In this document: in pieces, positions 1,145 to 35,617 of the stretch
Position numbering within the stretch: the stretch's first letter is position 1
How the letters are laid out: each line of letters opens with the position of its first letter
Sequence record: LR756504.1
Reading direction: 5' to 3' (one strand)
Length of the DNA stretch: 64,000 nucleotides
Translations under genes and position numbers: made by a program
Notes under the pieces: generated by a model
What the model saw: only the letters and a program-made list of their open reading frames with translations
Databases searched by the model: none
What the model was told of the DNA's origin: nothing

Positions 1145-1699
1145 ATGAATTTCTACTCAAATTTCGATGATTTTCTATTAGAGAAAAATGGATTTACACA
1201 CAATGTATTATTATATAAATTAAATATTCCTGGATGGGAAAATATTATAAACAGTATTGATAAAGAAGATATTTGGAAAATAGAGAATACAGAATTACCT
1301 GGTATACCAGGTGGTTATCAATTGTATCCACATGTTACTTTATTGTATAATTTAAGAAATACAAATATAAACAAAATTGGTTCATTAATAAGCACCTTAG
1401 AACCTATTAAATTTGAAATTAATGGTATAAATATATTTAGAACATCTAAGGGATACGATGTATTAAAAATGTCTGTTAAACCAACCGAAGAACTTCTTTA
1501 TATACATCAAATATTTAAGGATATTTTTCATACAAATTCTAATGATGATTATACACCACATATTACAATAGCATACTTAAAAGAAGGTACTGCTCTAAAA
1601 TATGTTGATTATGAATATAAAAATATTATTTATTCCGATACTATCATATACAGTCTAAAAAGTGGTTATCAACTCGAATTTAAAATTGATGCTAAATAA
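1145..1699 (+). CDS. 2H phosphoesterase (2'-5' RNA ligase / Acb1-like fold) with CTS-like N-terminus
   Basis: Two HxT motifs: YPHVTLLY and TPHITIAYLKEG; N-terminus MNFYSNFDDFLLEK. Confidence 0.85.
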   Translation: MNFYSNFDDFLLEKNGFTHNVLLYKLNIPGWENIINSIDKEDIWKIENTELPGIPGGYQLYPHVTLLYNLRNTNINKIGSLISTLEPIKFEINGINIFRTSKGYDVLKMSVKPTEELLYIHQIFKDIFHTNSNDDYTPHITIAYLKEGTALKYVDYEYKNIIYSDTIIYSLKSGYQLEFKIDAK

Positions 1700-3357: not shown

Positions 3358-3516
3358 ATGAAGAAATTTACTGACTACCAATTAGTTATAGAAAAAAAGG
3401 AAATAGAAAGAAAGAAATATTTAGAAGTAATTCACTTACCCGAATTATCAATAACAAAAGAATCACTTAATGAATACCTTAAACTATACAATCTAAAATT
3501 AGAAGAATTAAAATGA
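3358..3516 (+). CDS. Small protein with CTS-like N-terminus (not in ORF track)
   Basis: MKKFTDYQLVIEKKEIERKKYLEVIHLPELSITKESLNEYLKLYNLKLEELK*, ATGA overlap with 3513. Confidence 0.65.
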   Translation: MKKFTDYQLVIEKKEIERKKYLEVIHLPELSITKESLNEYLKLYNLKLEELK

Positions 3517-3731
3517 AATATTTAAAAACATTTGAGAATTACTATCACGATGTTCTGAATTATTATATCAAGAAGTCTGAAGTAGAAAAAGAGAAAGATG
3601 GTGGAGATGATAATGATGAAAATCTACCCGATGACTTACTCGATGATGATGAAATAGAAGTTAATGATGTAACTAAACCTTTAAAATATGATGTTAATAA
3701 TTCTATAAACATCTTTAACAATTTAATGTAA
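3513..3731 (+). CDS. Small acidic protein with CTS-like N-terminus
   Basis: MKYLKTFENY...; Asp-rich middle. Confidence 0.7.
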   Translation: MKYLKTFENYYHDVLNYYIKKSEVEKEKDGGDDNDENLPDDLLDDDEIEVNDVTKPLKYDVNNSINIFNNLM

Positions 3732-3732
3732 T

Positions 3733-3762
3733 AAAAAAGGGATTCAAACGAATCCCTTTTTT
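3733..3762. terminator. Bidirectional intrinsic terminator
   Basis: aaaaaagggattc-aaac-gaatccctttttt between convergent genes. Confidence 0.9.
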
Positions 3763-3764
3763 AT

Positions 3765-5891
3765 TTATTTAACTATTGTCATAGATATACTATCAGGAAC
3801 AAAATCATACTTAGAAAACGTCATATTAGGGACTGCTCTTCCAGATGTTAGAGTTCTTAATGATGTAATATAACCAAACAACATTGATAGTGGAACTGAT
3901 GCAGTAATAAGCTGAGTATTTCCTTTATTGTCAATATTCGTAATAGAACCTCTTCTCTTATTCAAATCACCAGATACAGACCCAATAAAATCATCAGGTG
4001 TAGTTACAACTACTTCCATGATAGGTTCTAATAATTTTGGTTTAGCTTGTTTAGAAGCTACTTTAAATCCTTCTTTTGCTGCTAATTCAAATGACAATGC
4101 ATCAGAATCCACATCATGATAAGAACCATGTATAAGTCTAATTTTCATAGATTCTACAGGATAGCCACCTAAAGGACCATTTTTCATAGCTTCTTCAAAT
4201 CCTTTTTGAATAGGTGTGATAAATTCTTTTGGAATTACTCCACCAACTATTTCATTAACGAATTCCAAACCTAATTTTCCATCTTCACGTGGACCAATTT
4301 CAAACACAATATCAGCAAATTTACCTCTACCACCAGTTTGTTTACTGAATACTTCTCTATGTTGAAACTTATTAGTTAAGGTTTCTTTGTACGCAACTAA
4401 AGGCGCACCTTGTTTTACCTCAACACCATGATCACGTTTCAATGTTTCAAGTCTAACTTCTAAGTGAAGCTCACCCATACCCCTTATTATAGTTTGACCA
4501 GTTTCTTTATCAGTATTTACTCTAAGAGATGGATCCTCTTCAACTAATTTAGAAAGAGCAATTCCCAATTTATCAGAATCCGCTTGACTTTTTGCTTCAA
4601 TCGCATAACCTATCACAGGCTCAGGAAAAGACATAGACTCTAAAACAACTTTGTTATCAATAACAAGTGTATCACCAGTTCTAATATTCTTTATACCGAT
4701 AAACGCAACTATATCACCTGCTTCTGCACTTTCAATTTGAATTTGCTTATTCGAGTGCATTTGTACAATTCTTGATACTCTTTCTTTAGTACCTGTTCTC
4801 ATATTAATAATATAAGAACCTGCATTAATATGACCAGAATAACATCTAACATAACACAACTTACCATATTGGTCAGTTGTTATCTTAAAAGCAAGTCCAG
4901 TAAATGGTCTACCAATCGCTGGAGTAATCTCAACTTCTTCATCAGTATCAGTATTTATACCCTTTGTGATCCTATCTTTAGGTGAAGGAAGATATGCACA
5001 TACAGCATCTATTACAGACTGAACACCTTTATTTTTAAAGGCAGAACCGCAAAGAACTGGAAATATTTTCATTTCAACAGTAGCCTTTCTGATAACAGAT
5101 TTCACTTCTTCTTCACTAATTTCTTGATTATCCAAATATTTTAGCATAAGTTCATCATCATATTCAGATAGAGTTTCTAATAAAGATTTTCTGTATTCAT
5201 TTACAGTTTCTACTATATCTGTCGGAATTTCAATTTCTCTATAAGTTTTACCTTCATCTTCAGTATTCCATAGAATACCTTTCATTGCAATTAAATCAAC
5301 TACCCCGATAAAACCATCTTCTGAACCAATTGGTATTTGTAATGGTATTGCATTCGCACCGAGTTTTTCTCTTATAGTTTTAACAGCCTTAAAGAAGTTA
5401 GCACCCGCTCTATCCATTTTATTAACAAAACATACTCTTGGAACACCATAACGATCAGCTTGTCTCCAAACAGTCTCAGACTGTGGTTCTACACCCGATA
5501 CAGCGCAAAATAGAGCAACTGCACCATCCAATACTCTAAGTGAACGTTCTACCTCAACTGTAAAGTCAACATGTCCTGGTGTGTCTATAATGTTAATATT
5601 ATAGGATTCACTATTTGGTATAAGTTCACCTTGTGTTGTTGGATAGTTCCAAAATACTGTAGTTGCAGCAGAAGTAATCGTAATACCTCTTTCTTTTTCT
5701 AAATCCATATGGTCCATTGTAGCACCCGCACCATCTCTATCATGTACTTCACCAATTTTGTGTGTTTTACCCGTATAATATAAAATACGCTCTGTTGTTG
5801 TAGTTTTACCAGCATCGATATGGGCCATAATTCCAACATTTCTAAGTAGTCCGAGTTCCTTACCTTTCCTACCTGTATCCGAATCTTTCAT
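3765..5891 (-). CDS. fusA: Translation elongation factor G
   Basis: G1 [11 protein letters not shown]2 RGITI, G3 DTPGH, G4 NKMD, domain [11 protein letters not shown]; 708 aa; not in an rpsL-rpsG operon. Confidence 0.98.
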
Positions 5892-5928
5892 TTTCTTTTT
5901 TTTTATTTTTTGGTTAATTTTTACAAAT

Positions 5929-5960
5929 AAAAAACCCTGAATTTTTTATGTTCAGGGTTT
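5929..5960 (-). terminator. Attenuator terminator upstream of fusA
   Basis: Minus strand AAACCCTGAA-9 nt-TTCAGGGTTT followed by a U-rich tract, 38 nt before the fusA ATG. Confidence 0.85.
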
Positions 5961-5986
5961 ATATGATTGATTAAAAGTATTAGAAT

Positions 5987-6058
5987 TTAGTCAATATATA
6001 CCCTGTCGTATCTTGATACGATAATTGTTTTGATAATAAATTTTAATACTGTTTTCAT
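5987..6058 (-). CDS. fusA leader peptide (23 aa)
   Basis: MKTVLKFIIKTIIVSRYDRVYID*; its 3' part contains CAGGGT, complementary to the 5' arm of the terminator. Confidence 0.75.
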   Translation of the reverse strand: MKTVLKFIIKTIIVSRYDRVYID

Positions 6059-6152
6059 AATATTCTATATATCTTTGTGTATTATACCTCTATAACGCAA
6101 AAATATCAAAAATGTTATATCTTTAAAGAAAACATTTTAAATATATATCATT

Positions 6153-6479
6153 ATGATATTCAATTTCACCAAATTTAATGAATCAAATACTGAAAATAAT
6201 AAAATATATCCATGTTATTGTTTTGCTGTTTATGATGATGAAGCACCTAAAAACTTAGAAAATATTAAAAAATTATTAAAATCAATAGATGGTATTCGAA
6301 TAATATATAATCATTATAATGATGGTGAAATATACTTACACGTAATAATACAAGATAAAGATGATGAATATTTAAAAACATACGTAAAAGATACATTATA
6401 CAAATTAGATAAACTTGCAGTTAATTTTTATATGTATAGCGAAAATGATATAAAATTTTTAATTGGTCATGGAAAATAA
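6153..6479 (+). CDS. Hypothetical late protein, weak paralog of 6463..6750
   Basis: TAAATATATA 5 nt upstream; N-terminus MIFNFTKFNES. Confidence 0.75.
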   Translation: MIFNFTKFNESNTENNKIYPCYCFAVYDDEAPKNLENIKKLLKSIDGIRIIYNHYNDGEIYLHVIIQDKDDEYLKTYVKDTLYKLDKLAVNFYMYSENDIKFLIGHGK

Positions 6480-6750
6480 TTATACTTGTTATAGACTAAC
6501 TTTACCAGAATCTAAAGATATAGTATCTAAATTTAGAGGACTTAAAAATAAGCTTAATGAAATTGAAGGATTAGAAGTATATCACTATAAATTAACTGCT
6601 GTTTTACATACTATAATCATTATAATAAAAGATGAAAAAAATCTTTATTTAGTCGATTATATAACTAATTGTTTAAAGAAACTTGGAAGGAATTTTAATA
6701 TGCTTTCTCTCACTGAAACCGATTTATTAAAATTGAGAAAATTAAAATAA
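6463..6750 (+). CDS. Hypothetical protein, weak paralog of 6153..6479
   Basis: LKNKLNEIEGLEV vs IKKLLKSIDGIRI pattern. Confidence 0.7.
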   Translation: MVMENNYTCYRLTLPESKDIVSKFRGLKNKLNEIEGLEVYHYKLTAVLHTIIIIIKDEKNLYLVDYITNCLKKLGRNFNMLSLTETDLLKLRKLK

Positions 6751-6751
6751 A

Positions 6752-7273
6752 TTATTCAACCCCATATTTACCGTAGCAATATACTTTATATTTAGAAATA
6801 TTTGACTTAAGGCTATTTAAAATACTTTCAAAATTATCAAAAGTTATTCTATTATCAAAGAAACCAATTGTCTCTAAAAACTTATCATTTTCTTCCATAT
6901 CATCATCTGAATTTTCATCTGAATAAACATCTTCATTAATGTAGAATACTAAATTAACTTTAAGCTTTTTTAAAGCATGAAAAATATTAACTTCTAAAAC
7001 AGTATCAAATGCTCTACCGTCAAATTCTTTTGTAATTATGAAATATATCATAGTAGAATTATTACTATCTTTTACATAAACATGCTCATTGTTAAATTCT
7101 GGAATAGCTTTAAAAACCATAGATTTTATATACTTAGTATAATTTGCTACTTCTGGTTCAGGTTTTCCAAACATAAATCTGCTAAATTTCTTTGTTTTAG
7201 CCATATCCTTTATTTCCGAATCGGGCAACTTTGCCATATCAGAATAATCATAATATTCTTTTATATACTTCAT
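6752..7273 (-). CDS. Putative virion-internal protein (CTS-like N-terminus)
   Basis: MKYIKEYYDY; TAAATATATA 4 nt upstream. Confidence 0.6.
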   Translation of the reverse strand: MKYIKEYYDYSDMAKLPDSEIKDMAKTKKFSRFMFGKPEPEVANYTKYIKSMVFKAIPEFNNEHVYVKDSNNSTMIYFIITKEFDGRAFDTVLEVNIFHALKKLKVNLVFYINEDVYSDENSDDDMEENDKFLETIGFFDNRITFDNFESILNSLKSNISKYKVYCYGKYGVE

Positions 7274-7357
7274 ATTGTATATATTTAAAACATTTCTCTT
7301 TTTTAATACATCTCAACATGTTGATTATAAACAGTTTATTTAAAATTATTAGATTTT

Positions 7358-7386
7358 AAAACTTTTCAATTTCTAATCAATATAAT
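7358..7386 (+). promoter_or_regulatory. Class-2 promoter
   Basis: AAAACTTTT-14 nt-TATAAT, ATG 4 nt later. Confidence 0.6.
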
Positions 7387-7390
7387 GTCT

Positions 7391-7597
7391 ATGGAAAAGG
7401 TATTAATTATTTCTTCAATCATATTGACAGTTCTATCAATTGGTTGATTTGGTGTATACACAATCAAAACATCCGTCGGAAAATTATTGATGTGTCAAGA
7501 CAACAGAGAATTTTCCGATATAATGGGAAATGAGCTTATATCAGAAATACAAAAAGATTCTGTGAAAGTATTTAAAATAGATAAAAAACAAGAATAA
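7391..7597 (+). pseudogene. Small membrane-anchored protein interrupted by one in-frame TGA (7445-7447)
   Basis: MEKVLIISSIILTVLSIG*FGVYTIKTSVGKLLMCQDNREFSDIMGNELISEIQKDSVKVFKIDKKQE*. Confidence 0.6.
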
Positions 7598-7618
7598 AAA
7601 CTTTAAAATTAAATTAAT

Positions 7619-7834
7619 ATGTCAATAGTAAGAAGTAGGGAAGATGAATTAGATAGATTGGAGAAAGCACATAGCGCATTATCCGATATAGCTTTTAGTA
7701 GCGCATATAGCTCTCACCACGATACTTTAGTCAATGATATTATAAATTTTGACGAATTTACAGAAGTTTATGATAAAATTGCTAAATGGAGTATTGAATT
7801 TAGAAAGAGAGTAGATGATATTGAATATCAATAA
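7619..7834 (+). CDS. Hypothetical protein
   Basis: 71-aa ORF with A-rich leader. Confidence 0.7.
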   Translation: MSIVRSREDELDRLEKAHSALSDIAFSSAYSSHHDTLVNDIINFDEFTEVYDKIAKWSIEFRKRVDDIEYQ

Positions 7835-7865
7835 CATTTTTTTTCAATTTAACGTTATATAAATT

Positions 7866-8327
7866 ATGTTAATATTCACCATATTACTTTCAATAATAGC
7901 AAATATTGGTATTGGCGCAATATCATGTGGGTTAGCTTCTATAACTATGAATATGTTTAATGAAGATTATGAAAACTATTTAGCCAGATTAAATTTTTTA
8001 CAGACTATAATACTTTTCTCATTTGGCGTATTAGCCATTTTCACAATACCTTATGCTATAATAAAAAGTGATAAAAATATTATCAAGAGAACAAGATTTA
8101 AACTTGGTGAAAATGTAAAAATAAAAAAGAATGAGATAGAAAAACATTATTCTAAAGAAAGTGCAATTCATAGAGAAAATTGGGTTTATAAAGTAAATTC
8201 AATGTCTGTACGTAATGGTAGATTAGTATATACTATTGCACATGATGGTGGTATGATAATTCGCTTGTATTCATCGGATGTCGAAAAAGTTTTAAGTAGA
8301 AAAGAAAGAATAAAAAATTTATGTTAA
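7866..8327 (+). CDS. Membrane protein with C-terminal RKERIKNL tag
   Basis: Two hydrophobic helices plus a basic C-terminal domain; architecture like 1705..2160. Confidence 0.75.
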   Translation: MLIFTILLSIIANIGIGAISCGLASITMNMFNEDYENYLARLNFLQTIILFSFGVLAIFTIPYAIIKSDKNIIKRTRFKLGENVKIKKNEIEKHYSKESAIHRENWVYKVNSMSVRNGRLVYTIAHDGGMIIRLYSSDVEKVLSRKERIKNLC

Positions 8328-8752
8328 TTTTAATCATAGCAATTTTTTTAATATTTGGACTGGGTACATGGTATGCAGTTCATACAGATGAAACTTATGA
8401 TAAAATTAATGGAGTAATTAAATATAAATACACCAATGTTATTACGGATTTAAAACCAGGTGATGATTTTTCTTGTCGCATAGATGGTGATAGATGTGTA
8501 GGCAAAATACAGATTATATCAAATCGTGTTTATTTATGTCAAGATGTTAGCTATGGTGTAGCACCTGCGTGGCATTCACATCGTGATAAAATGGGATATG
8601 CTTATAGTTGGTTTGCTGGATATATTTATTTAACTAAAGGAATTAATACAAGAGTATTACAAGAATTTTTACAGTCCATTGAAAAGTACAGTATTACCGA
8701 CTTTAAGTTGAGGGATAATAGTAGGAAAGAAAGAATAAAAAGGTTGTATTAA
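8321..8752 (+). CDS. Membrane-anchored protein with C-terminal RKERIKRL tag
   Basis: N-terminal hydrophobic helix. Confidence 0.75.
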   Translation: MLILIIAIFLIFGLGTWYAVHTDETYDKINGVIKYKYTNVITDLKPGDDFSCRIDGDRCVGKIQIISNRVYLCQDVSYGVAPAWHSHRDKMGYAYSWFAGYIYLTKGINTRVLQEFLQSIEKYSITDFKLRDNSRKERIKRLY

Positions 8753-23133: not shown

Positions 23134-23207
23134 TGCTGTGGAGCAGATTTGAACCGCTCTATTCTACCATATCAGAGTAGTGTGTTAACCGAATACAACC
23201 ACACAGC
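23134..23207 (-). tRNA. Atypical tRNA-Ile(GAU), no encoded CCA
   Basis: Acceptor GCTGTG/CACAGC+A73, D-loop A14-G18G19, anticodon stem CTACT/GGTAG with loop CTGATAT, T-arm AGCGG-TTCAAAT-CTGCT; mismatches at 7:66 and 10:25, G at 8. Confidence 0.75.
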
Positions 23208-23232: not shown

Positions 23233-23258
23233 AAAAACCCTGTCAAGCAGGGTTTTTT
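23233..23258. terminator. Intrinsic terminator-like hairpin
   Basis: aaaaaccctg-tcaag-cagggtttttt. Confidence 0.8.
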
Positions 23259-27385: not shown

Positions 27386-27477
27386 GTGGATAAATATAGA
27401 TAAATAAAATAAGAAAACCAAAAATTATAGAAAAGATTCATTTTTATATATAAACTACTTAAAAATTGTATAATTTA

Positions 27478-30400
27478 ATGATTGGTAGCAAATTTACTGG
27501 CCCTATATTACCCTTTAATTTAAATGATCCCACACATATTTCGGGATATGGTAAAGGTGGTATTTATACATCAATAGATACTCTAACTGATAGAGATGCT
27601 ATACCTATTGGTAAAAGAGAGCATGGTATGGTTGTAGCCGTTGGTAATGCAAGCACTGCTGGTGGTGTGTTTGATAATTATCAATTAATTATACCAAATT
27701 GGTATCTTTTAAATAGTGTAGATAGACTTACATCATTAGCTGACAATAATAATTGGAGAAAATTAGTAAATATTACAATAAATGGTTCTAGTGGTACTAA
27801 TTTCACTTTAACAACATCTAATATTAATGAAGGAACTAACTTTTATTATACCGATGTAAGAGTAAATGCAAATTCAAATGTTATTAATGGTGCTACAGCA
27901 TATAGCTGGGGTAATCATTCAACTGCTGGTTATCAACTAGCATTAGGTTATACACCAGTAAATAAAGCTGGTGATACTGGTATTGGTGCTTTGAGTATTA
28001 GCAATACAACTGCTTCTACTTCTAGTTCTTCTGGTGCGCTAATTGTTGCTGGTGGTGTGGGGATTGGGGGTGCTTTATATGGTACATCTTCAAATTTTAC
28101 TATTTATAATTTATTAGACACCACTTATAAAACAGCATTAGATCTATCAGCAGCTAATACATTAAGATTAGGAAATGGTTTCACAACACTAACATCACCA
28201 GTAACATTAATTCAACTTACAGGTGGAAATACTTTTATATCTAATAGAACAGTTGGATCCACCCTTAGTTTGGGTGTTTTAGGTGGTAATAACAATTCAC
28301 AAGGAGTTATAATAACTACTGATGGTAATTTAACAAGTGCTACAGCTATTAGAAACATATTAACTGTGAACCCTTCTTATGTGATAGGTACATCTGGTGT
28401 GGGAACTTTAAAGGCTGTAAGTGTATCACCAGTTTTAACTCTTAGCAGTACCGCAAACCAAGTAATGACTATGGTAGAAATTAATCCTGGTATTACAAAT
28501 AGTCTTACAAATGGTTCTACATTATATGGGTTAAGAAGTAGAATTAATACCGATACGAGTGGCGCAATCACCTATAATATTTATGTTGATGGTACAGCAC
28601 CAAATTATTTTGCTGGTAATACAGTTATCGGTGGTAGTTCAAGTGGTGCTACTTTAGATGCACCTATACATAGAGTTTTAGATTTTGATGGAGTTACTTA
28701 TAGAACAGCATTAGATTCATCAGCACTAAATACATTAAGATTAGGTAACGGATTTACTACTTTAACAACACCTACTTCTACTTTAAATTTTACTGGTGGT
28801 AATAATGTTATTGCAAATACTGGTGGTCAATTAACCATACAATCTTCTGGTAATTTTAACGTTCTATTACAAACATTCGCTAATGCAAATCCAAGCAATG
28901 GTATTTATCTTGTAAAAAATGGAAACATTACTGCCACTACAAATAGTCATCAAATAGCACAAATAAGTGGAACTTTCACACAATCTGGAACTGGTGTTGG
29001 TATACAAGCATCTTTATATATCAATCATACTATTAGTCAAACATCAACTGGTATTAATCAACCAGTATATGGTATATACATTAACCCAACTATATCATCA
29101 CCACTTTCAACTCAAGTAATTGGTTTAAGATCTAGTGTTAATAATAGTACTAGTGGTAATACAGGTTATAATTTATACATTGATGGTACTGCACCAAATT
29201 ACTTGGCTGGTAATACAGTTATTGGTGGTAGTTCAAGTGGTGCTACTTTAGATGCTCCAATACATAGAGTTTTAGATTTTGATGGTGTTACATATAAAAC
29301 TGCTCTATCTTCTACAACAACTAATAGATTAAACATTGGTATTGGGTATTCTACGACATACATAGCAGGTAATTTGTTGATGGCTGATACAGGTGGTACT
29401 GTACGTACTCTTTTTGATTCACCAAGTGTAAATGCTATTAATTTTGGATCTTCATTTGCCACAATTTTAGTTCCATCCAGTTTAATAGATATTTCTAAAA
29501 ATTTCGCGGCGGCTGGTTCAACAAACTCTTATGGTATAAGAACCAGTGCAACACTTACTGGTACGAGTGGTGCAACAGGAACATCAGCATCGTTTTCAGC
29601 CATAAATACTATCAATCAACCATCAGGTGCTTTAGGTGATATTTATAGTTTTAATGCTTCACCTTCTTTCACAAGGATAGAAGCAGCTTTAAAATATGTA
29701 GGTTATTATTCAAATGTCGCTTCGTTTAGTACAGGTGGTGGTACAACTTATTCTGGATATCATAATGGTGCAGCATCTACTTTCTTTAATCACAAAATAC
29801 AATTAGGTTCTGGTACAGGTATAGCAGATTCTAACGGTGTTTTTGTGGCTAGAATACCCACTACAGTAGGTAGTGCAACTAATTACTTTGGAATTAATAA
29901 TAGTTCTGCTACTAATGATATATCAATAGGCGCACATTCCGCATCTGGTGATACTAATGTAAGTATAAGCTATTTTACAAAAGGTACAGGTACACATAAA
30001 TTTACAGGGAATATAACAGTAGCAGGTACTACTGGGATTATTCAATCACCAACAATACAAATTTTAGATTTTGATGGTATTACATATAAAAATGCTTTAA
30101 CAAATTCTGGTACAACAAATCAATTATTTGTAGGTAGTGGGTTTGGTACTACTTCTATACCAGTTGGTTCAAATAGATTTAACTTTTCTAATGCCAGTTT
30201 TAGTTATACAAATGGCGTATCTATTCAAGCGTTTAGTTTAGTGGCTGCTCAAATTACTATTCCAAATGGTGCAATTGCTTCTACTTATGCATTTCAAAAT
30301 GCGTCAGGATTCAGTTATGCATTTCTATCTAGTGGAACAATAACAGTAGGCTCATCGACTGCTGATGCTGCATCATTTGTTGCAAACAATACTATAAATC

Positions 30401-31020
30401 AAACTTCTGGAAGTACTCAAATATCAATGTTTTCGGCAATACCTGCTGCTTTAACTAATGTTTCTGGTAGGTTTGTTGGTTATTACTCTAATATTTCAGG
30501 TGCAGCTCCAACTGGTGGTGGTACTGCATATGCTCAATATCATGCGGGTACAGCACCGAGCTTATTCTCTGGTACGATTACATCGAAAGGATTTGCTGAT
30601 GCTTCTAGTGCATCGGCTGGTAATGTTGGTGAAGTGATAGAAAGTACAATAAGTACATTTACTAATTATACCACAACTGCAACGTATCAAAATATCACAT
30701 CAATATCTTTAACTGCTGGTGATTGGGATATCTATGGTTTTGGTACATTTAATTCAAATACAGCGACAATAACAGCGGGTGCTAATGCTATATTTAATAT
30801 AGCAACAGCAACAGCAAGCGCAACAGGTGCTATAGAAGGTAAAACTATTTCTTATATACCACAAGCAGCATTACTAGGAACATCCATTGAAACTTGTGGT
30901 TCAATGCGTATACGTGTTAGTATCTCATCAACTACTTCATATTATTTGAATACACAATCAACATTCACATTACTTAATCCTCAATTCTCTGGTACTATAA
31001 GTGCTAGACGTATAAGATAA
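27478..31020 (+). CDS. Long tail fibre-like protein
   Basis: About 1180 aa, Gly/Thr/Ser/Asn-rich, internal repeats; TTTATATATA upstream. Confidence 0.75.
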   Translation: MIGSKFTGPILPFNLNDPTHISGYGKGGIYTSIDTLTDRDAIPIGKREHGMVVAVGNASTAGGVFDNYQLIIPNWYLLNSVDRLTSLADNNNWRKLVNITINGSSGTNFTLTTSNINEGTNFYYTDVRVNANSNVINGATAYSWGNHSTAGYQLALGYTPVNKAGDTGIGALSISNTTASTSSSSGALIVAGGVGIGGALYGTSSNFTIYNLLDTTYKTALDLSAANTLRLGNGFTTLTSPVTLIQLTGGNTFISNRTVGSTLSLGVLGGNNNSQGVIITTDGNLTSATAIRNILTVNPSYVIGTSGVGTLKAVSVSPVLTLSSTANQVMTMVEINPGITNSLTNGSTLYGLRSRINTDTSGAITYNIYVDGTAPNYFAGNTVIGGSSSGATLDAPIHRVLDFDGVTYRTALDSSALNTLRLGNGFTTLTTPTSTLNFTGGNNVIANTGGQLTIQSSGNFNVLLQTFANANPSNGIYLVKNGNITATTNSHQIAQISGTFTQSGTGVGIQASLYINHTISQTSTGINQPVYGIYINPTISSPLSTQVIGLRSSVNNSTSGNTGYNLYIDGTAPNYLAGNTVIGGSSSGATLDAPIHRVLDFDGVTYKTALSSTTTNRLNIGIGYSTTYIAGNLLMADTGGTVRTLFDSPSVNAINFGSSFATILVPSSLIDISKNFAAAGSTNSYGIRTSATLTGTSGATGTSASFSAINTINQPSGALGDIYSFNASPSFTRIEAALKYVGYYSNVASFSTGGGTTYSGYHNGAASTFFNHKIQLGSGTGIADSNGVFVARIPTTVGSATNYFGINNSSATNDISIGAHSASGDTNVSISYFTKGTGTHKFTGNITVAGTTGIIQSPTIQILDFDGITYKNALTNSGTTNQLFVGSGFGTTSIPVGSNRFNFSNASFSYTNGVSIQAFSLVAAQITIPNGAIASTYAFQNASGFSYAFLSSGTITVGSSTADAASFVANNTINQTSGSTQISMFSAIPAALTNVSGRFVGYYSNISGAAPTGGGTAYAQYHAGTAPSLFSGTITSKGFADASSASAGNVGEVIESTISTFTNYTTTATYQNITSISLTAGDWDIYGFGTFNSNTATITAGANAIFNIATATASATGAIEGKTISYIPQAALLGTSIETCGSMRIRVSISSTTSYYLNTQSTFTLLNPQFSGTISARRIR
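28588..29303 (+). repeat. 122-nt coding direct repeat (28588-28709 and 29182-29303)
   Basis: Both encode DGTAPNY(F/L)AGNTVIGGSSSGATLDAPIHRVLDFDGVTY(R/K)TA; mostly third-position differences. Confidence 0.9.
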
Positions 31021-31120
31021 TGTAATCTTCAAAGAAGATAGCAATTTTAAACTCATTTTTTTTATAAATATAATTCAACTTTTTTAATATTATTCATATA
31101 AATAAAAAAGTATATTTAAT

Positions 31121-31519
31121 ATGGTAATAGAATTGGAATTAAGCAAAATAATAGGAGCTTATGAAATTTTAGAAGGTGGTACAGAAATACCAAATTCAAT
31201 AAAAAATTTAAATCTTAAATTTAAAGGAAAAACTGCTTTAAAAATTTCTCTTTTGAAATTAAAATTAAAAGATTTCGCATCTATAGCAGAAGAAACAAGA
31301 AAAAATCTTATAAAAGATAAATATGGTGTTGTCGATGTCGATGGTAACTATTTTGTATCCAATGAAAATATACAAGATTTCGTATCCGAATTTAACGAAA
31401 TATTAAATACTAAGCATAGCATTTCATTTACACCTTTAATTTGGGAGGATTTAGATGATGTTGAAATCCCTCTAGAATTTTCAGATAAATTACTTCATTT
31501 CTTTGAATTTGATGTATAA
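31121..31519 (+). CDS. Tail-fibre-associated small protein (possible chaperone)
   Basis: Directly after the fibre gene; TATAAATA at 31097-31104. Confidence 0.5.
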   Translation: MVIELELSKIIGAYEILEGGTEIPNSIKNLNLKFKGKTALKISLLKLKLKDFASIAEETRKNLIKDKYGVVDVDGNYFVSNENIQDFVSEFNEILNTKHSISFTPLIWEDLDDVEIPLEFSDKLLHFFEFDV

Positions 31520-31525
31520 CTAACT

Positions 31526-31918
31526 ATGGAATATGCTAAAAGAGTTTTAAAAGAGTTAAAGCAAGAATTTTTTATTGTATTGACTTTTAGTGGTGGCATT
31601 AGTGCTTTAATACCACCACTAACTATCTTCATGACTAAATTTGAAATAGTTATTTCTTTTAGAGACATTTTTTTGTTATTCATATGCTGTGTTTTTATTT
31701 TTATTGGTAATTATAAAAAAGATAATCTTATAACTAATTCTGTTAGAAATTTGTTATCTATAATAGCATTTACACTTTTGATGTTACCAACAATGGGACT
31801 ATTAAATGAAATGGCTGGTATGGATATGAAAGTACCTATTATGAGCTATGCTTTATCCTATCTAATTGCAATTTTACTTTATACTATAAAAAATACCGTA
31901 TTTCATATTATAAAATAG
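31526..31918 (+). CDS. Multi-pass membrane protein (holin candidate)
   Basis: 3-4 hydrophobic helices, basic N-terminus, in the late structural block. Confidence 0.45.
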   Translation: MEYAKRVLKELKQEFFIVLTFSGGISALIPPLTIFMTKFEIVISFRDIFLLFICCVFIFIGNYKKDNLITNSVRNLLSIIAFTLLMLPTMGLLNEMAGMDMKVPIMSYALSYLIAILLYTIKNTVFHIIK

Positions 31919-31945
31919 AATATATAAGTAAAATATATTCATTTA

Positions 31946-33598
31946 ATGATAAAGTATTTCCCATTTACTTCTACTGGTACTTATTCAGGGAGCTATGAAG
32001 CTTCTACTTCTTTTGGGGTACTTCTCGGAACTGAATTATTTAGTAATAATGATTTAAGCAATCCTTCATTATTTTGGTATTCACAATTTAATACTCTTAT
32101 TACTGGTTTAAATGGTCAATATGACTTATTAGGTATACATAATGGTAAATTTATTAGTGGATTTATTACAGTTAATGGTGCTAAAACATATAGACTTTCA
32201 TTTGATATTTTAAATGTTAATACAGCATCTTTTATAATTGAAAAAGGAGATTTTTTTTCAACACAACAATTATTAACAACTGTTAGTACACCATCAATTG
32301 GAACATTTACATATGACTTTTCTTTTGGTGCTTCTGGTAATAATAGAATTGGAATTATAGCAAGTGGGACTGAAATGATTATTACCAATGTTTCTCTTAG
32401 AGATATTACAACTACAACTTTACCTAGTATTCCAACAGGTTCTATTTGTGGACCTGGTGATATTGCTAAAATAGGTTTAAATTGGTATACATCAGAAAGT
32501 GTTGACTTTTTAAGTGGTGATTTAACAATTGAAAGTTTATTATCATCCGATTGGTCATCACAATTAAAACAAGATTGGCTTAAAGCTTATTTAAAATATA
32601 TAGGGCTTGGTACTCTTTCAAATACTAATTTTAACTTGGTATTACAAAAAGCAGAAGATATTAATTTATTTAATCAATTAAGTAATCCAAGTGTTGCATA
32701 TGTAAATAAAGATTTAATAACTAATGAAATAAGCATTGCTTTAAATGTTTATGATTTAAGATTCGTAATAGAATTAGGTAATACATTTGCTAATAATGAT
32801 CCATTCAAAATTTTAATTTATTTAAATCACACAAAAGATAAAGCATTAGTATCAAATTTATGTAAAGTTAAATATAAAGGATATGAACAAATTGTTTGGT
32901 GTTTTGATGGAATAGAATATAAAGATTACGAACTTTCTAATACACCATCTTTGTTTGATGGTGGTGGTAATATTTTTGGGCAGGTTAAATTGGCAGGAGA
33001 TGGTATAATAACAAAATATATTGTTAAAAGAAATATTGATCCCAATGATCCAACGGTTGGTATTTGTTCTGGTGATGGTGGACCATTCTGTATGGGTGAT
33101 GAAATTCATCTAATTGATACATCCGTTTGGACAACAAACGAATTTGGTACTAATGGTAGCACATGGACTTGGATTGGAGATTATTCACAACTTAAATATC
33201 ATTGGTATATTGCCGATATAACAAATCCTTGTTATGATTATAGAAATTATGGTGTGGAAATGATGAAATTTCCTATTCGTGTGATTCAATTTTGTGAATT
33301 GAATGATTTCAACTATACTATAGAATATTTCTATTATCCTACAGATATAAATACCGATATTATAGTTAGAATAAATGAAAATGTATTTTGGTATCCTGGT
33401 GATAGTGTAACTATTTCTGATTTTGCTATAATAAATGGTTATTATGCAACTGATTGGATAATTATCAGCAAAGGCACTGACATTAATGCTACAAATAATG
33501 AAAACGATTCAACACATTTCAGATTAAGAAAAACTGGATTTGATAATACAATTTTTCAATTTCCGACAAGTAACTACAAAATATACCGCTCTTTCTAA
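31946..33598 (+). CDS. Putative virion structural protein
   Basis: 550 aa, beta-rich, in the structural block. Confidence 0.55.
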   Translation: MIKYFPFTSTGTYSGSYEASTSFGVLLGTELFSNNDLSNPSLFWYSQFNTLITGLNGQYDLLGIHNGKFISGFITVNGAKTYRLSFDILNVNTASFIIEKGDFFSTQQLLTTVSTPSIGTFTYDFSFGASGNNRIGIIASGTEMIITNVSLRDITTTTLPSIPTGSICGPGDIAKIGLNWYTSESVDFLSGDLTIESLLSSDWSSQLKQDWLKAYLKYIGLGTLSNTNFNLVLQKAEDINLFNQLSNPSVAYVNKDLITNEISIALNVYDLRFVIELGNTFANNDPFKILIYLNHTKDKALVSNLCKVKYKGYEQIVWCFDGIEYKDYELSNTPSLFDGGGNIFGQVKLAGDGIITKYIVKRNIDPNDPTVGICSGDGGPFCMGDEIHLIDTSVWTTNEFGTNGSTWTWIGDYSQLKYHWYIADITNPCYDYRNYGVEMMKFPIRVIQFCELNDFNYTIEYFYYPTDINTDIIVRINENVFWYPGDSVTISDFAIINGYYATDWIIISKGTDINATNNENDSTHFRLRKTGFDNTIFQFPTSNYKIYRSF

Positions 33599-33646
33599 AA
33601 ATCACTTACTGTTTTTTAATATATAAATAAAATAGGTATAGATTTA

Positions 33647-35617
33647 ATGAACCCTTTAGATTATTTAAAAATGATTGGTAGTAATCTTGGTATTACGGCT
33701 TTTCGTGATAAATATAATTTATTAGTTGATAGAACTATTTATGATGTTAGCGCAGAGCTAAATGGCACATCGGGTACAGTTTTGACATTTTATACTAATT
33801 TAGATACCATACAAGTAGTAGTACCAATTTCTCTTGCATCATTAACAGATATTCATTTAACAAACTCACAAGTAGGTCAGACAATAATTTACAATGGTAC
33901 AAATTGGGTCAATTCATATCCACTACTTGCAACATTAGGTGATGTTGAATTAACTAATCTACAAACAAAAGATGTATTATTATATAATGGTACTAACTGG
34001 GTTAATGGTATTTCAGAAAATAATGATTATACATCAAATATTTTCATTAATGATGGTGATACATATACAACCACAATTTCTACTTTAGATGAAATTTTAG
34101 GTTTATTAGCACCTTCAAAACCAGGTAATTTAAGTACTAAGTCTCTAACTGTATCACCAATATATACCACAAGTCCTATATCTATAATTCAAAGTAAAAC
34201 AGGTACAGCGAGAACTTATATTACAGATGATACAACACCTATAATAGAAATTACACCTTATACAAATACACCAGCATCAACAAATAATGGTGTATATAAT
34301 GCTGATGCAGGAGTTTTAAATTCAGTTTTAATTGTTGATCAAGGTGGTAGCAATACAACTTTCACAACACCTGGTATTACATTTACAACAGCGAGCGAAG
34401 CTGGTCAATCTAGTATAGACATAGACACAACTCATAGTTTAACTGTAACTGATGATTTTGATTATCATTTTGGTGTAGTAGGTAAACAAGGATTTTGGAA
34501 AGCTTTCTTATCAAGAGTTCAAATTTTAAATCCTTTAACATATTATCCAACTGAGCAACATAATGTTTCAATGACACATTCTATTACAGGAACTTCAAGT
34601 TTAACATTCTTTATTGATGATCCATCAACACCAAGTATTACAAATTTATTAATTAGCACTACTGCTACATCACCTCAACCAAGACATATTAGTGGTGTAC
34701 CATCATTAAGTACTGGTGATATTATCAATTCACAGTTTGTATTACACAATGCAATTAAAACATTTTATAATTCTAAAATTGTTAATGTCAATTCAACGTG
34801 GACAACATCTGTAGATGCTTTAGAAACAGGAATTAAAACATATAGTAGTAATTATAATGCTAACATAAATGTTGCAACTTTAATTAATAAATATACAGAA
34901 GATATTGTACTTACTAATAATGGATATAATTCTAAATATCAAACTATAACAACAGGAAACTTTGTACAAACAACAGGAGCTATTGCTACAACTCAATCTG
35001 GTAAAAAAATGAGAATCGATACAGTGAGTAATGAAACAATTAGAAAAACATCCGATACTAGTTTATATCCAACATCAGGATATGGTAATACATTTGATTC
35101 AACAAAGAATATTAAAACAGATATTGGATACACAGAAGAATTATTATTAATAAATGGGCTATTTAGATTTCCATCAAATACAGATAATTTTACAACAAAC
35201 TGGCCAGAAGTTGGTCCAGATTACTCATCAGGGATGAATTCTAGTTCAGGATACAGGTGGGTAACATTTGATTTAGGATCACATAGTAATGTACCAGCTA
35301 TAAGATTTGGATTTAATACACCAACTGGATTTACATTTGATGCACTTACAACTAAAATTTTAGATAATATGAAAGTGTATGTTAAATGTGGTACAGCAAC
35401 AGCTTGGTTAGATGGTAATTTGGCATATAACTCAGGTTCATTTAATGTTAATACAAATGGTTCTGGTGCATTAGATATAGGAGGTTCATTAAATGGTACA
35501 ACTAATAGAAGAGTAACATTTGGTGGTACAGTATCAGGAAATATATACGTGAGAATTGGTATTGCAAATGGTATTACTGGTATAAGCTTTGCTTCAATAA
35601 CCGAATTACCATTATAA
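33647..35617 (+). CDS. Putative tail/baseplate structural protein
   Basis: Two L-D(I/V)-LT...YNGTNWVN repeats, Thr-rich; TAATATATAAATA upstream. Confidence 0.65.
   Translation: MNPLDYLKMIGSNLGITAFRDKYNLLVDRTIYDVSAELNGTSGTVLTFYTNLDTIQVVVPISLASLTDIHLTNSQVGQTIIYNGTNWVNSYPLLATLGDVELTNLQTKDVLLYNGTNWVNGISENNDYTSNIFINDGDTYTTTISTLDEILGLLAPSKPGNLSTKSLTVSPIYTTSPISIIQSKTGTARTYITDDTTPIIEITPYTNTPASTNNGVYNADAGVLNSVLIVDQGGSNTTFTTPGITFTTASEAGQSSIDIDTTHSLTVTDDFDYHFGVVGKQGFWKAFLSRVQILNPLTYYPTEQHNVSMTHSITGTSSLTFFIDDPSTPSITNLLISTTATSPQPRHISGVPSLSTGDIINSQFVLHNAIKTFYNSKIVNVNSTWTTSVDALETGIKTYSSNYNANINVATLINKYTEDIVLTNNGYNSKYQTITTGNFVQTTGAIATTQSGKKMRIDTVSNETIRKTSDTSLYPTSGYGNTFDSTKNIKTDIGYTEELLLINGLFRFPSNTDNFTTNWPEVGPDYSSGMNSSSGYRWVTFDLGSHSNVPAIRFGFNTPTGFTFDALTTKILDNMKVYVKCGTATAWLDGNLAYNSGSFNVNTNGSGALDIGGSLNGTTNRRVTFGGTVSGNIYVRIGIANGITGISFASITELPL

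What the first reader, a model, noticed from the sequence alone, without database searches (positions are those of the whole stretch)
5929..6058. Phage EF-G is gated by a leader-peptide transcription attenuator
Seen (minus strand): a 23-codon uORF (MKTVLKFIIKTIIVSRYDRVYID*, 6058-5987), then a strong terminator (AAACCCTGAA/TTCAGGGTTT + U tract) 38 nt before fusA. The uORF 3' part carries CAGGGT (identical to the terminator 3' arm, so an antiterminator) next to an internal hairpin TCGTAT-CAAG-ATACGA. Established: ribosome-position-dependent terminator/antiterminator switching is the classical attenuation mechanism. Inference: the phage senses ribosome stalling or elongation stress and conditionally makes its own EF-G, a translation-stress feedback circuit I do not know of in a phage.
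Basis: partly seen in the sequence, partly recalled or inferred. Interest (0 to 1): 0.85.

Follow-up and report, generated by a model that had tools for sequence, protein, structure and literature searches.

The report
Leader-peptide attenuator before phage EF-G
A 636-kb uncultivated phage carries its own translation elongation factor G behind a short leader with a mini-gene and three competing RNA helices, built like a classical bacterial attenuator, so the phage probably makes EF-G only when ribosomes lag on the leader; this is a sequence-based prediction, not a measurement.

Summary
On the minus strand there is a 23-codon uORF (6058-5987), a 6-bp hairpin (6021-6006), a CAGGGT copy (6005-6000) and a canonical terminator (5960-5932 plus U tract), 40 nt before fusA (5891-3765).

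- The antiterminator is a 12-nt strand. Its stem-loop (-12.6 kcal/mol) matches the terminator (-11.3).
- uORF codons 3-8 pair with the stop codon and spacer, forming an anti-antiterminator.
- Both extra helices beat shuffled controls (p 0.002-0.02).
- Two related metagenomic phage-like contigs (EF-G 93% and 84% identical) keep all the elements. The first 14 uORF codons are better conserved than fusA itself.
- In a ribosome-occupancy model of all three leaders, the antiterminator forms with the ribosome at codons 1-14 and is lost from codon 15-16.

No promoter-like site lies between the uORF and fusA, and fusA has its own terminator.

Weak points: three close homologues, almost no covariation, no mapped transcription start, no transcript or ribosome data, and the sensed signal is unknown.

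Verdict: probably a ribosome-dependent transcription attenuator of the classical kind, new in gating a phage EF-G. Sister phages and Bacteroidota carry an unrelated 11-codon leader (..IRAV[S/V/L]-stop) before a shorter EF-G paralogue.

The parts
6081..6109 (-). Candidate promoter(s) of the leader-fusA unit. One is sigma-70-like: TTGATA (6109-6104), 17 nt, TATAAT (6086-6081). The other is an overlapping Bacteroidetes-type -7 box, TATTTTTG (6105-6098).
   Evidence: 11 of 12 consensus match. It is the only TAnnTTTG on this strand between 6152 and 5889. TAnnTTTG and TTTG-N17-23-TAnnTTTG are enriched 2.5x and 7x upstream of genes in this window. The transcription start is not mapped. The promoter region is not conserved in L182.
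5987..6058 (-). Leader ORF (uORF), 23 codons plus TAA: MKTVLKFIIKTIIVSRYDRVYID*.
   Evidence: Sequence. Relatives encode MKTVLKFIIKTIIVSTYDRVYID* (L180) and MKTVLKFIIKTIIVFPYEMGMY* (L182). Codons 1-14 are 40/42 nt identical to L182 against 79.6% in fusA (p 0.005), and both changes are synonymous.
6037..6050 (-). R1, the 5' strand of the anti-antiterminator (AGUAUUAAAAUUUA), inside uORF codons 3-8.
   Evidence: It pairs with 5989-5976. Duplex energies are -10.4, -13.6 and -9.7 kcal/mol in the three leaders, with shuffle p 0.009, 0.002 and 0.024. This helix is the minimum-energy structure of the naked nascent transcript for 3' ends 5977-5958. Every substitution among the three leaders keeps pairing or improves it, read.
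6006..6021 (-). h1 hairpin, UCGUAU-CAAG-AUACGA, -3.5 kcal/mol. Its role is unknown. It may be an RNA polymerase pause hairpin or a small translocation barrier.
   Evidence: The stem is invariant and the loop varies (CAAG, CAAC, UUCC) in the three leaders. It is compatible with both the antiterminator and the terminator.
5994..6005 (-). Antiterminator 5' strand, CAGGGUAUAUAU, inside uORF codons 18-22.
   Evidence: It pairs with 5964-5953. The stem-loop 6005-5953 is -12.6 kcal/mol. A ribosome with its P site at codon 15 or later covers it.
5976..5989 (-). R2, the 3' strand of the anti-antiterminator (UAAAUUCUAAUACU). It starts at the uORF stop codon and lies in the antiterminator loop.
5953..5964 (-). 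Antiterminator 3' strand, AUAUAAACCCUG. It overlaps 8 nt of the terminator 5' arm.
   Evidence: One compensatory pair, A-U to G-C, in L180.
5925..5960 (-). Intrinsic terminator: 10-bp stem AAACCCUGAA/UUCAGGGUUU, 9-nt loop, then UUUAUUU.
   Evidence: -11.3 kcal/mol. The stem is invariant and the loop varies in the relatives. Found by my own scan.
5892..5924 (-). A-rich, poorly conserved 5' untranslated stretch before fusA.
   Evidence: 13 of 34 aligned positions are identical to L182. It holds no promoter-like match.
3765..5891 (-). fusA, elongation factor G, 708 aa.
   Evidence: TIGR00484 EF-G, 963 bits against a cut-off of 659; the tetracycline ribosomal-protection models score below their cut-offs. 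Five EF-G Pfam domains. The switch-II DTPGH motif is present. About 67% identical to cellular Bacteroidota EF-G, for example Hymenobacter.
3736..3759 (-). Terminator of fusA (AAAGGGATTC-GTTT-GAATCCCTTT + T tract), also terminator-like on the other strand. It makes fusA a one-gene unit.

Best explanation
This is a ribosome-position-dependent transcription attenuator of the trp/thr/pheST design, and it gates a monocistronic phage fusA.

The transcript starts upstream of 6058. Its nascent RNA can form three mutually exclusive helices:
- R1:R2, the anti-antiterminator (6050-6037 with 5989-5976).
- The antiterminator (6005-5994 with 5964-5953).
- The terminator (5960-5932 plus U tract).

The model has three states:
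1. A ribosome that is slow or stalled within roughly the first 14 leader codons covers R1 but leaves the antiterminator strand free. The antiterminator then forms before the terminator 3' arm is made, and RNA polymerase reads on into fusA.
2. A ribosome that keeps pace and reaches codon 15 through the stop codon covers the antiterminator strand and R2. The terminator forms and transcription stops 34 to 40 nt before fusA.
3. With no ribosome, R1:R2 forms first and favours termination.

The net logic is that EF-G is made when leader translation lags behind transcription.

Shown here: the elements, their energies, their excess over chance and their conservation. Inferred: that the uORF is translated, that ribosome and polymerase are coupled, and the switching itself. 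More speculative (about 0.25): the physiological input is general elongation capacity, including EF-G activity itself, which would make this a homeostat.
For: Anatomy.

Competition between antiterminator and terminator:
- The stem-loops are -12.6 and -11.3 kcal/mol.
- The antiterminator potential exceeds shuffles in the full upstream context (p 0.007).
- It also exceeds shuffles in the ribosome-cleared local context in all three leaders: -10.0, -8.5 and -8.3 kcal/mol, p 0.0085, 0.01 and 0.019.
- It is the largest of 21 terminator-like hairpins in the window.

Anti-antiterminator: duplex p 0.009, 0.002 and 0.024.

Order of formation in the growing naked transcript: R1:R2, then the antiterminator, then R1:R2 plus the terminator.

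Occupancy model, in all three leaders: P(antiterminator) is 0.94-0.99 with the P site at codons 1-14 and 0 from codon 15-16.

Refolding barrier from the antiterminator state to the terminator state: 8.2 kcal/mol in the window.

Conservation:
- Relatives with EF-G 93% and 84% identical keep the uORF, h1, antiterminator and terminator.
- Stems are invariant while loops, the spacer and the post-terminator stretch diverge.
- uORF codons 1-14 are more conserved than fusA.
- In L182 a 1-nt insertion changes the C-terminal peptide, yet the ORF still ends 4 nt from the same place. That is as expected if the 3' part matters as RNA.

Gene layout:
- No sigma-70-like or TAnnTTTG site lies between the uORF and fusA.
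- The upstream neighbour is divergent.
- fusA has its own terminator.

Precedent:
- A translational GTPase gated by a leader-ORF attenuator: HflXr (PMC6310831).
- Elongation-factor activity read out through a leader terminator: EF-P with pyrL (PMC5021804).
Against: - There are only three homologous leaders, and they are closely related. The h1 and terminator stems never vary, so they give no covariation information.
- The antiterminator has one compensatory pair, which is not significant (161 of 500 shuffles).
- At equilibrium the terminator dominates at every ribosome position (P 0.54-0.95), so function depends on kinetics that I could not simulate properly.
- In naked full-length context the antiterminator gain is small in L180 and L182 (-0.2 and -0.3).
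- In the window, R1:R2 does not outcompete the antiterminator at equilibrium, so the 'no translation' state is ambiguous.
- The refolding barrier is low in L180 and L182 (about 4 kcal/mol).
- The transcription start is not mapped, and the promoter motifs are not conserved in L182.
- There is no Shine-Dalgarno sequence. This is expected for a Bacteroidetes host, but it leaves translation of the uORF unproven.
- There is no clear run of regulatory codons, only 4 Ile in 13 codons (p 0.03).
- Transcription-translation coupling in the predicted host phylum, and the polymerase that transcribes this gene, are unknown.
- The sequence-predicted tet(M) leader peptide was later found probably not to be translated (bioRxiv 10.1101/2021.03.24.436905).
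Confidence: 0.6

Rival explanations
1. There is no switch. The uORF and terminator form a small independent unit (a short peptide gene or short RNA), or an insulator that stops read-through from upstream minus-strand genes. fusA is then expressed by constitutive leakage or from a promoter type I cannot recognise.
For: The minus-strand gene 7273-6752 ends with no terminator-like hairpin nearby, so its transcripts could run on to 5960. The terminator wins at equilibrium. Promoters of huge phages are poorly known. A TTTG follows the U tract in all three leaders.
Against: This reading does not explain the two extra helices that beat chance and are kept in the relatives. It does not explain why uORF codons 1-14 are more conserved than fusA. 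No promoter-like match lies downstream, and the post-terminator stretch is the least conserved part. The C-terminal third of the peptide is frameshifted in L182, which is odd for a functional peptide.
Confidence: 0.2
2. The attenuator is the same, but the input is charging of a specific tRNA (isoleucine, perhaps with threonine), as in the ilv and thr leaders, rather than general elongation capacity.
For: Codons 8, 9, 12 and 13 are Ile (FIIKTII). This gives 4 Ile in 13 sensor codons against 9.8% background, p 0.03. They sit where a stalled ribosome masks R1 but not the antiterminator. They are invariant in the three leaders.
Against: The enrichment is modest in an AT-rich genome. No amino-acid logic links Ile to EF-G. 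The rare ATC codon (6% of Ile codons) would normally be read by the same tRNA as ATT (general knowledge), so its rarity need not slow decoding.
Confidence: 0.15
3. The attenuator is the same, but the conserved N-terminal peptide MKTVLKFIIKTIIV is an arrest peptide. It would stall the ribosome in response to a ribosome-targeting small molecule or a host anti-phage translation toxin, as in the erm, msrD and hflXr leaders.
For: All 14 residues are identical across the three leaders. There is precedent for translation factors induced this way (PMC6310831; PMC10314930). The hydrophobic I/F/V-rich core loosely resembles erm leader stalling motifs; that comparison is from my own recollection and was not tested.
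Against: There is no R-L-R or +x+ motif in the conserved part. Nucleotide-level conservation is equally explained by R1 pairing. This EF-G is a canonical equivalog and not a known protection factor.
Confidence: 0.1
4. It is an RNA-only or protein-binding riboregulator. A factor, for example EF-G itself or another phage protein, binds h1 or the antiterminator, and the ORF is incidental.
For: The h1 stem is strictly conserved without a role in the competition. Many translation genes are autoregulated by binding to their own leaders (general knowledge).
Against: There is no match to any Rfam family. The ORF frame and the end position are maintained in all three leaders despite an indel. The positions of the helices relative to the ORF fit ribosome control.
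Confidence: 0.07

Closest known systems
Classical leader-peptide transcription attenuators of amino-acid operons (trpL, thrL, ilvL, hisL, pheL), from general knowledge
   Same: A short leader ORF. Region 1 lies inside the ORF and pairs with region 2. An antiterminator and a terminator share a strand. A hairpin plus U tract sits just before the gene. The stop codon lies about 28 nt before the terminator, and the switch is kinetic.
   Different: There is no evident tandem run of one regulatory codon. The gene is a translation factor on a phage, not a biosynthetic operon. The Rfam Thr_leader model scores only 17.9 bits against a cut-off of 55, and only over the terminator, so there is no family membership.
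pheST attenuator (pheM leader), from general knowledge
   Same: A gene of the translation apparatus is controlled by leader-peptide attenuation, which gives feedback through the translation process itself.
   Different: pheM senses Phe-tRNA through Phe codons. Here the input is unknown and the product is an elongation GTPase.
hflXr (lmo0762) attenuator rli80 of Listeria monocytogenes (PMC6310831), and msrD/MsrDL (PMC10314930)
   Same: A translational GTPase or ATPase that acts on ribosomes is placed behind a small ORF with terminator, antiterminator and anti-antiterminator. It is induced when ribosomes stall on the leader.
   Different: Those leaders carry drug-dependent arrest motifs (RLR and others) and respond to antibiotics. 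No such motif is present here, the product is a canonical EF-G, and the carrier is a phage.
pyrBI (pyrL) attenuator, and EF-P dependence of coupling at it (PMC5021804)
   Same: The outcome depends on how closely the ribosome follows RNA polymerase, so it can report elongation-factor activity.
   Different: In pyrL a close ribosome disrupts the terminator itself, so close coupling turns the gene on. Here a close ribosome masks the antiterminator, so close coupling turns the gene off.
The ..IRAV[S/V/L]-stop leader found here before the short EF-G paralogue of Bacteroidota and of the sister huge phages LR745206 and LR756502
   Same: A short uORF plus a conserved hairpin lies between the promoter and a stand-alone EF-G-family gene in the same phage clade and host phylum.
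   Different: The sequence is unrelated. It has 11 codons, an invariant C-terminal peptide, and a hairpin that starts 1-3 nt after the stop with no adjacent U tract. It serves a different EF-G lineage, 50-56% identical to the window's.

Membership tests
Ribosome-mediated (leader-peptide) transcription attenuator | A short ORF with a start codon between the promoter and the regulated gene | tested here: met
   ATG 6058 to TAA 5987, downstream of promoter-like sites at 6109-6081. Present in both relatives.
Ribosome-mediated (leader-peptide) transcription attenuator | An intrinsic terminator (G+C-containing hairpin plus U tract) between the leader ORF and the gene | tested here: met
   5960-5932 plus UUUAUUU, -11.3 kcal/mol. 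The stem is invariant in the relatives.
Ribosome-mediated (leader-peptide) transcription attenuator | An antiterminator helix that shares a strand with the terminator and has comparable stability | tested here: met
   6005-5994 with 5964-5953, stem-loop -12.6 kcal/mol. Shuffle p 0.007 (full context) and 0.0085, 0.01 and 0.019 (local context, three leaders).
Ribosome-mediated (leader-peptide) transcription attenuator | An anti-antiterminator whose 5' strand lies in the leader ORF, so that a ribosome there frees the antiterminator | tested here: met
   R1 6050-6037 with R2 5989-5976. Shuffle p 0.009, 0.002 and 0.024. It forms first in the growing naked transcript. At equilibrium it is weak in the window.
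Ribosome-mediated (leader-peptide) transcription attenuator | Ribosome position decides which helix forms | tested here: inconclusive
   The occupancy model gives the expected pattern in all three leaders. It is a thermodynamic model with an assumed footprint, and no experiment backs it.
Ribosome-mediated (leader-peptide) transcription attenuator | The leader ORF is translated, and mutating it changes read-through | not testable with these tools
   This needs reporter fusions, toeprinting or ribosome profiling.
Ribosome-mediated (leader-peptide) transcription attenuator | A cluster of regulatory codons that names the signal | tested here: inconclusive
   4 Ile in codons 8-13, p 0.03. No tandem run of a single codon.
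Ribosome-mediated (leader-peptide) transcription attenuator | Structure supported by covariation in homologues | tested here: inconclusive
   Three sequences. The stems are invariant. There is one compensatory pair in the antiterminator (161 of 500 shuffles reach the score) and pair-preserving changes in R1:R2.
Drug- or stall-inducible attenuators with arrest peptides (erm, msrD, hflXr type) | A recognised arrest motif (RLR, +x+ and the like) in the leader peptide | tested here: not met
   No such motif lies in the conserved codons 1-14. The R16/R19 region is not conserved in L182. Motif definitions are from PMC6310831.
Drug- or stall-inducible attenuators with arrest peptides (erm, msrD, hflXr type) | The downstream gene is a resistance or ribosome-rescue factor | tested here: inconclusive
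   The product is an EF-G equivalog (TIGR00484, 963 bits). The tet ribosomal-protection models score below their cut-offs. A rescue role cannot be excluded.
Rfam Thr_leader (RF00506) and all other Rfam families | A score at or above the family's gathering threshold | tested here: not met
   17.9 bits against 55, E 0.48. Nothing else scores apart from Yfr10 at E 1.8.
..IRAV[S/V/L]-stop leader of the short EF-G paralogue | An 11-codon uORF ending I-R-A-V-[S/V/L]-stop, followed within 1-3 nt by the (C)CAATCAYC / GRTGATTG(G) hairpin | tested here: not met
   The window uORF has 23 codons and lacks both the motif and the hairpin. The window's EF-G belongs to another lineage.

The most novel reading that the evidence does not exclude
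The leader is an elongation-capacity homeostat. The speed at which ribosomes translocate through the first 14 leader codons, up to the h1 hairpin, depends on available EF-G activity. When host EF-G is depleted or disabled during infection, ribosomes lag, the antiterminator forms, and the phage switches on its own EF-G. In that case control of EF-G-family genes by short leader ORFs would have arisen at least twice, because sister huge phages and Bacteroidota use the unrelated ..IRAV[S/V/L]-stop leader before a different EF-G lineage.
Probability: 0.2. Interest if true: 0.8.

Novelty: new member of a known kind. Interest (0 to 1): 0.6.

Why it matters
Huge phages carry many translation genes, and the paper that described this genome proposed that their elongation factors sustain translation during infection (PMC7162821). 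When and why these genes are deployed is not known.

A leader that ties transcription of a phage EF-G to the pace of ribosomes gives a concrete and testable answer: the factor is made on demand, when translation falters. My full-text searches found no report of a leader-peptide attenuator in front of a phage-encoded translation factor.

The leader is about 170 nt and self-contained. It can be tested in reporter fusions or in a coupled in vitro system without culturing the phage. The unrelated IRAV-type leader on a second EF-G lineage suggests that uORF control of EF-G paralogues may be a wider theme in Bacteroidota that has been overlooked.

Tried and rejected
1. Homology of the window uORF to the IRAV-type uORFs of the sister phages. 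They share an ATGAAAAC start and the strings ATACGA and TTGACTAAATT. I rejected homology because the EF-G lineages differ (50-56% to each other, 67% to cellular EF-G), the motif and hairpin are absent, and MKT/MKN starts are commonplace at this base composition.

2. fusA as a Tet(M)/Tet(Q)-like ribosomal protection gene. Those genes have known leader control, but NCBIfam rejects the assignment.

3. A promoter between the terminator and fusA. None was found at 9 of 12 sigma-70 matches or as TAnnTTTG. The TTTG at the end of the U tract lacks the TA.

4. Rfam, at gathering and E-value thresholds, on the window leader and on relatives. Nothing was found.

5. The rare-codon idea. ATC is 6% of Ile codons and is used twice. 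I did not rely on it, because the same tRNA normally reads ATT and ATC.

6. Covariation. It is not informative with three sequences.

7. A search for more window-type leaders.

8. The 18- and 19-nt IRAV patterns gave mostly chance hits, for example L007 inside a coding region. I kept only hits with an in-frame start codon at -18, or with the hairpin.

9. Antiterminator gain in the full naked-RNA context is near zero in L180 and L182. Competition from R1:R2 explains this, so it is not absence of the helix.
Full report
**Where the window comes from.** Window 3500-8500 is 100% identical to LR756504.1 positions 65500-70500. LR756504.1 is a 636,363-bp 'uncultured phage'. The 636-kb genome is one of the four largest complete genomes of Al-Shayeb et al. 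2020. It belongs to the Mahaphage clade, and its predicted host phylum is Bacteroidetes. That paper notes phage EF-G genes and proposes that they sustain translation, but it describes no leader (PMC7162821). The window is 25-30% G+C.

**The observation.** Everything below is on the minus strand.
- The uORF runs from ATG 6058 to TAA 5989-5987 and reads MKTVLKFIIKTIIVSRYDRVYID*.
- The hairpin TCGTAT-CAAG-ATACGA is at 6021-6006.
- CAGGGT is at 6005-6000.
- The terminator is AAACCCTGAA (5960-5951), loop CATAAAAAA, TTCAGGGTTT (5941-5932), then TTTATTTG.
- fusA starts at 5891, 40 nt after the stem.
- The built-in terminator scan missed the hairpin because its loop limit is 8 nt. My own scan finds it.

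**The gene.**
- ORF 3765-5891 (708 aa) has all the EF-G domains.
- It scores 963 bits on TIGR00484 against a cut-off of 659. The tetracycline ribosomal-protection models stay below their cut-offs.
- The DTPGH switch-II motif is present.
- It is followed at once by a terminator that works on both strands (3759-3736).
- The upstream neighbours (6153-6479 and 6463-6750) are on the other strand. They have no Pfam or PHROG match.
- fusA is therefore a one-gene unit in a 261-nt divergent intergenic region.
- On the fusA strand the best promoter-like site of the region is TTGATA-17-TATAAT at 6109-6081 (11 of 12). It overlaps TATTTTTG (6105-6098), the only TAnnTTTG on this strand between 6152 and 5889.
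- TAnnTTTG is enriched 2.5-fold upstream of genes in this window, and TTTG-N17-23-TAnnTTTG is enriched 7-fold. This fits a Bacteroidetes-type transcription apparatus.
- No promoter-like site lies between the uORF and fusA.

- The antiterminator 5' strand is CAGGGUAUAUAU (6005-5994). It pairs with AUAUAAACCCUG (5964-5953), which overlaps 8 nt of the terminator 5' arm.
- The stem-loop 6005-5953 is -12.6 kcal/mol, against -11.3 for the terminator.
- Before the terminator 3' arm exists, letting the 5' arm pair upstream gains -7.4 kcal/mol. Shuffles give -1.5 +/- 1.7, and 0.7% reach the native value.
- That gain is the largest among 21 terminator-like hairpins in the window.
- CAGGGT occurs only 7 times in both strands of the window, and three of these lie in the leader.
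- A second competitor exists. AGUAUUAAAAUUUA (6050-6037, uORF codons 3-8) pairs with UAAAUUCUAAUACU (5989-5976), which begins at the stop codon and lies inside the antiterminator loop. The duplex is -10.4 kcal/mol, with shuffle p 0.009.
- In a stepwise fold of the naked transcript, this helix is the minimum-energy structure for 3' ends 5977-5958. The antiterminator takes over for 5953-5937. R1:R2 plus the terminator is the minimum-energy structure from 5932 on.
It is not the competing element.

**Ribosome model.** I blocked 27 nt around the P site and computed pair probabilities.
- In the transcript that lacks the terminator 3' arm, the antiterminator core has P 0.94-0.96 with the P site at codons 1-13 or 1-14. 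It drops to 0 from codon 15.
- A ribosome at the stop codon covers about 6004-5977. That span is the antiterminator strand and R2.
- At equilibrium in the complete transcript, the terminator wins at every ribosome position (0.70-0.94 in the window). The switch would therefore be kinetic, as in the trp leader.
- The direct-path barrier from the antiterminator state to the terminator state is 8.2 kcal/mol in the window.

**Relatives.** The window's EF-G is about 67% identical to cellular Bacteroidota EF-G, for example Hymenobacter and Cytophagales. It has two closer relatives in metagenomes:
- P0002, 93% identical, on L180 and L181.
- P0003, 84% identical, on L182 and L183.

Both sit among short ORFs, almost none of which has a Pfam match, and both carry the same type of leader.

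- The uORFs read MKTVLKFIIKTIIVSTYDRVYID* and MKTVLKFIIKTIIVFPYEMGMY*.
- Against L182, codons 1-14 are 40 of 42 nt identical, and both changes are synonymous. fusA is 79.6% identical, and 39% of its conserved codons carry synonymous changes. The probabilities are 0.005 for the nucleotides and 0.05 for so few synonymous changes.
- A 1-nt insertion in L182 changes the C-terminal peptide, yet the ORF ends 4 nt from the same spot.
- The h1 and terminator stems are invariant while their loops differ. The spacer is 19 of 28 identical, and the post-terminator stretch is 13 of 34.
- With the upstream part masked, the antiterminator gain is -10.0, -8.5 and -8.3 kcal/mol (p 0.0085, 0.01, 0.019).
- R1:R2 is -10.4, -13.6 and -9.7 kcal/mol (p 0.009, 0.002, 0.024).
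- All substitutions in R1 and R2 keep pairing or improve it: G-C to G.U, A-U to G.U, and A.C to A-U. A6050-U5976 becomes U-A in L180, where the synonymous ACA-to-ACT change is matched in the spacer (read).
- The occupancy model gives the same pattern in all three leaders.

**Weak points.**
- The three sequences are not independent.
- Formal covariation is nil for h1 and the terminator. For the antiterminator it is one non-significant pair.
- In naked full-length context the antiterminator gain in L180 and L182 is only -0.2 and -0.3, because R1:R2 competes.
- In the window, R1:R2 does not beat the antiterminator at equilibrium.
- The refolding barriers are about 4 kcal/mol in L180 and L182.
- The promoter motifs are not conserved in L182.
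- Nothing shows that the uORF is translated.

**What might be sensed.**
- The sensor codons are K T V L K F I I K T I I V. They hold 4 Ile in 13 codons against a 9.8% background (p 0.03).
- The rare ATC codon (6% of Ile codons) appears at codons 9 and 13. Because ATT and ATC normally share a tRNA, I do not lean on this.
- There is no recognised arrest motif.
- The simplest reading is that the leader measures how far the ribosome lags behind the polymerase. Precedents are EF-P dependence of termination at pyrL (PMC5021804) and the leader-ORF attenuator of the ribosome-splitting GTPase HflXr (PMC6310831).
- The tet(M) case is a warning. Its sequence-predicted leader peptide gave no toeprint, and mutating its start codon had no effect (bioRxiv 10.1101/2021.03.24.436905).

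**A second, unrelated EF-G leader.**
- The sister huge phages LR745206 (L001) and LR756502 (L003), and an IMG/VR contig (L011), carry a shorter EF-G of 651-658 aa. It is 50-56% identical to the window's and 72% identical between L001 and L003.
- It is preceded by an 11-codon uORF: MKNVIIIRAVL*, MKTLIYIRAVV* or MKTNRRIRAVV*. A 9-bp hairpin follows 1-3 nt after the stop.
- Pattern scans and look-ups of EF-G relatives gave 16 distinct versions.
- Some lie on bacterial Bacteroidota contigs of 1.09-1.54 Mb. Two of those have cellular gene neighbours, including a type IX secretion sorting domain. Named MAGs include Flavobacterium sp. and Sediminibacterium sp.
- The consensus is M-x-x-x-I-x-I-R-A-V-[S/V/L]-stop, always 11 codons.
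- Starts are ATG or GTG, and stops are TAA, TGA or TAG. Synonymous variation occurs at Arg (CGA, CGC, CGG), Ala (GCT, GCA) and Ser (TCC, TCT).
- Conservation is therefore at the peptide level, although most of these versions were retrieved with nucleotide patterns that fixed part of the motif.
- The hairpin covaries: 4 of 9 pairs show compensatory changes, and L189 has CCGTCCAC/GTGGACGG.
- No U tract adjoins the hairpin, so it is not a canonical terminator.
- A ribosome at the stop codon would hold its 5' arm open. This suggests sensing of termination, recycling or nascent-peptide arrest, which I did not resolve.
- The window phage has only one EF-G, and its leader is not of this type.

**Verdict.** The best explanation is a classical ribosome-dependent transcription attenuator gating a phage EF-G (confidence 0.6). 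The signal is undetermined. It is a new member of a known kind in a new setting. Interest is 0.6.

Noticed in passing
L001 5074-4913 (-), L003 4859-4702 (-), L011 1326-1485 (+); also L083, L126, L137, L160, L162, L186-L195: A conserved leader sits before a short (about 651-659 aa) EF-G paralogue. It has an 11-codon uORF, M-x-x-x-I-x-I-R-A-V-[S/V/L]-stop, with synonymous variation and all three stop codons. A covarying 9-bp hairpin starts 1-3 nt after the stop, and a GGCTT-containing motif lies about 60 nt further on. It occurs in sister huge phages and on bacterial Bacteroidota contigs and MAGs (two of 1.09 and 1.25 Mb with cellular neighbours; Flavobacterium sp., Sediminibacterium sp.). It has no Rfam match. 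The peptide end loosely recalls arrest peptides, which I did not test.
   Followed up: partly
window 3765-5891 compared with L001, L002, L003 and L004: Mahaphage-clade genomes each carry one EF-G, but from different lineages. The window's is about 67% identical to cellular Bacteroidota EF-G and only 49-56% identical to those of its sister phages, which implies separate acquisitions. In LR756501 (L002) the EF-G start overlaps the stop of an upstream ORF. In LR756508 (L004) a tRNA lies just upstream.
   Followed up: partly
L023 about 1390-1500 (+): Another huge-phage contig (211 kb) has a 19-codon uORF (MSFINIILNDIKFRKYNKN*) ending 2 nt before its EF-G ATG. The uORF start lies inside a perfect 10-bp hairpin (ATGTCGTTTA / TAAACGACAT). 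I read this by eye from the sequence.
   Followed up: no
window 23134-23207 (-): Rfam calls a tRNA here (33.2 bits, gathering score 29), but ARAGORN reports none in the whole window. A hairpin with the same stem as the leader terminator (AAACCCTG-TCAAG-CAGGGTTT + T tract) lies next to it at 23235-23255.
   Followed up: no
window 50167-58589 (-): A PrkA kinase (56652-58589), a DUF444/YeaH-like protein (53968-55284) and a SpoVR/YcgB-like protein (50167-52074) sit together. This looks like the bacterial yeaG-yeaH-ycgB stress module carried on a phage. Two DNA N6/N4 methylases (52342-53136 and 53142-54026) lie between them.
   Followed up: no
window 45701-46867 (+): A poly(A) polymerase / CCA-adding enzyme family protein (PolyA_pol head and RNA-binding domains). 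It is another gene of the translation and RNA apparatus.
   Followed up: no
window, gene starts throughout: Six genes have a TAnnTTTG box ending 3-4 nt before their ATG. Several IRAV-type uORFs start 5-9 nt after such a box. This suggests leaderless or nearly leaderless mRNAs are common in these phages.
   Followed up: no
window 27466-44384: A run of very large ORFs (414-1184 aa) has no Pfam match at E 1e-5.
   Followed up: no
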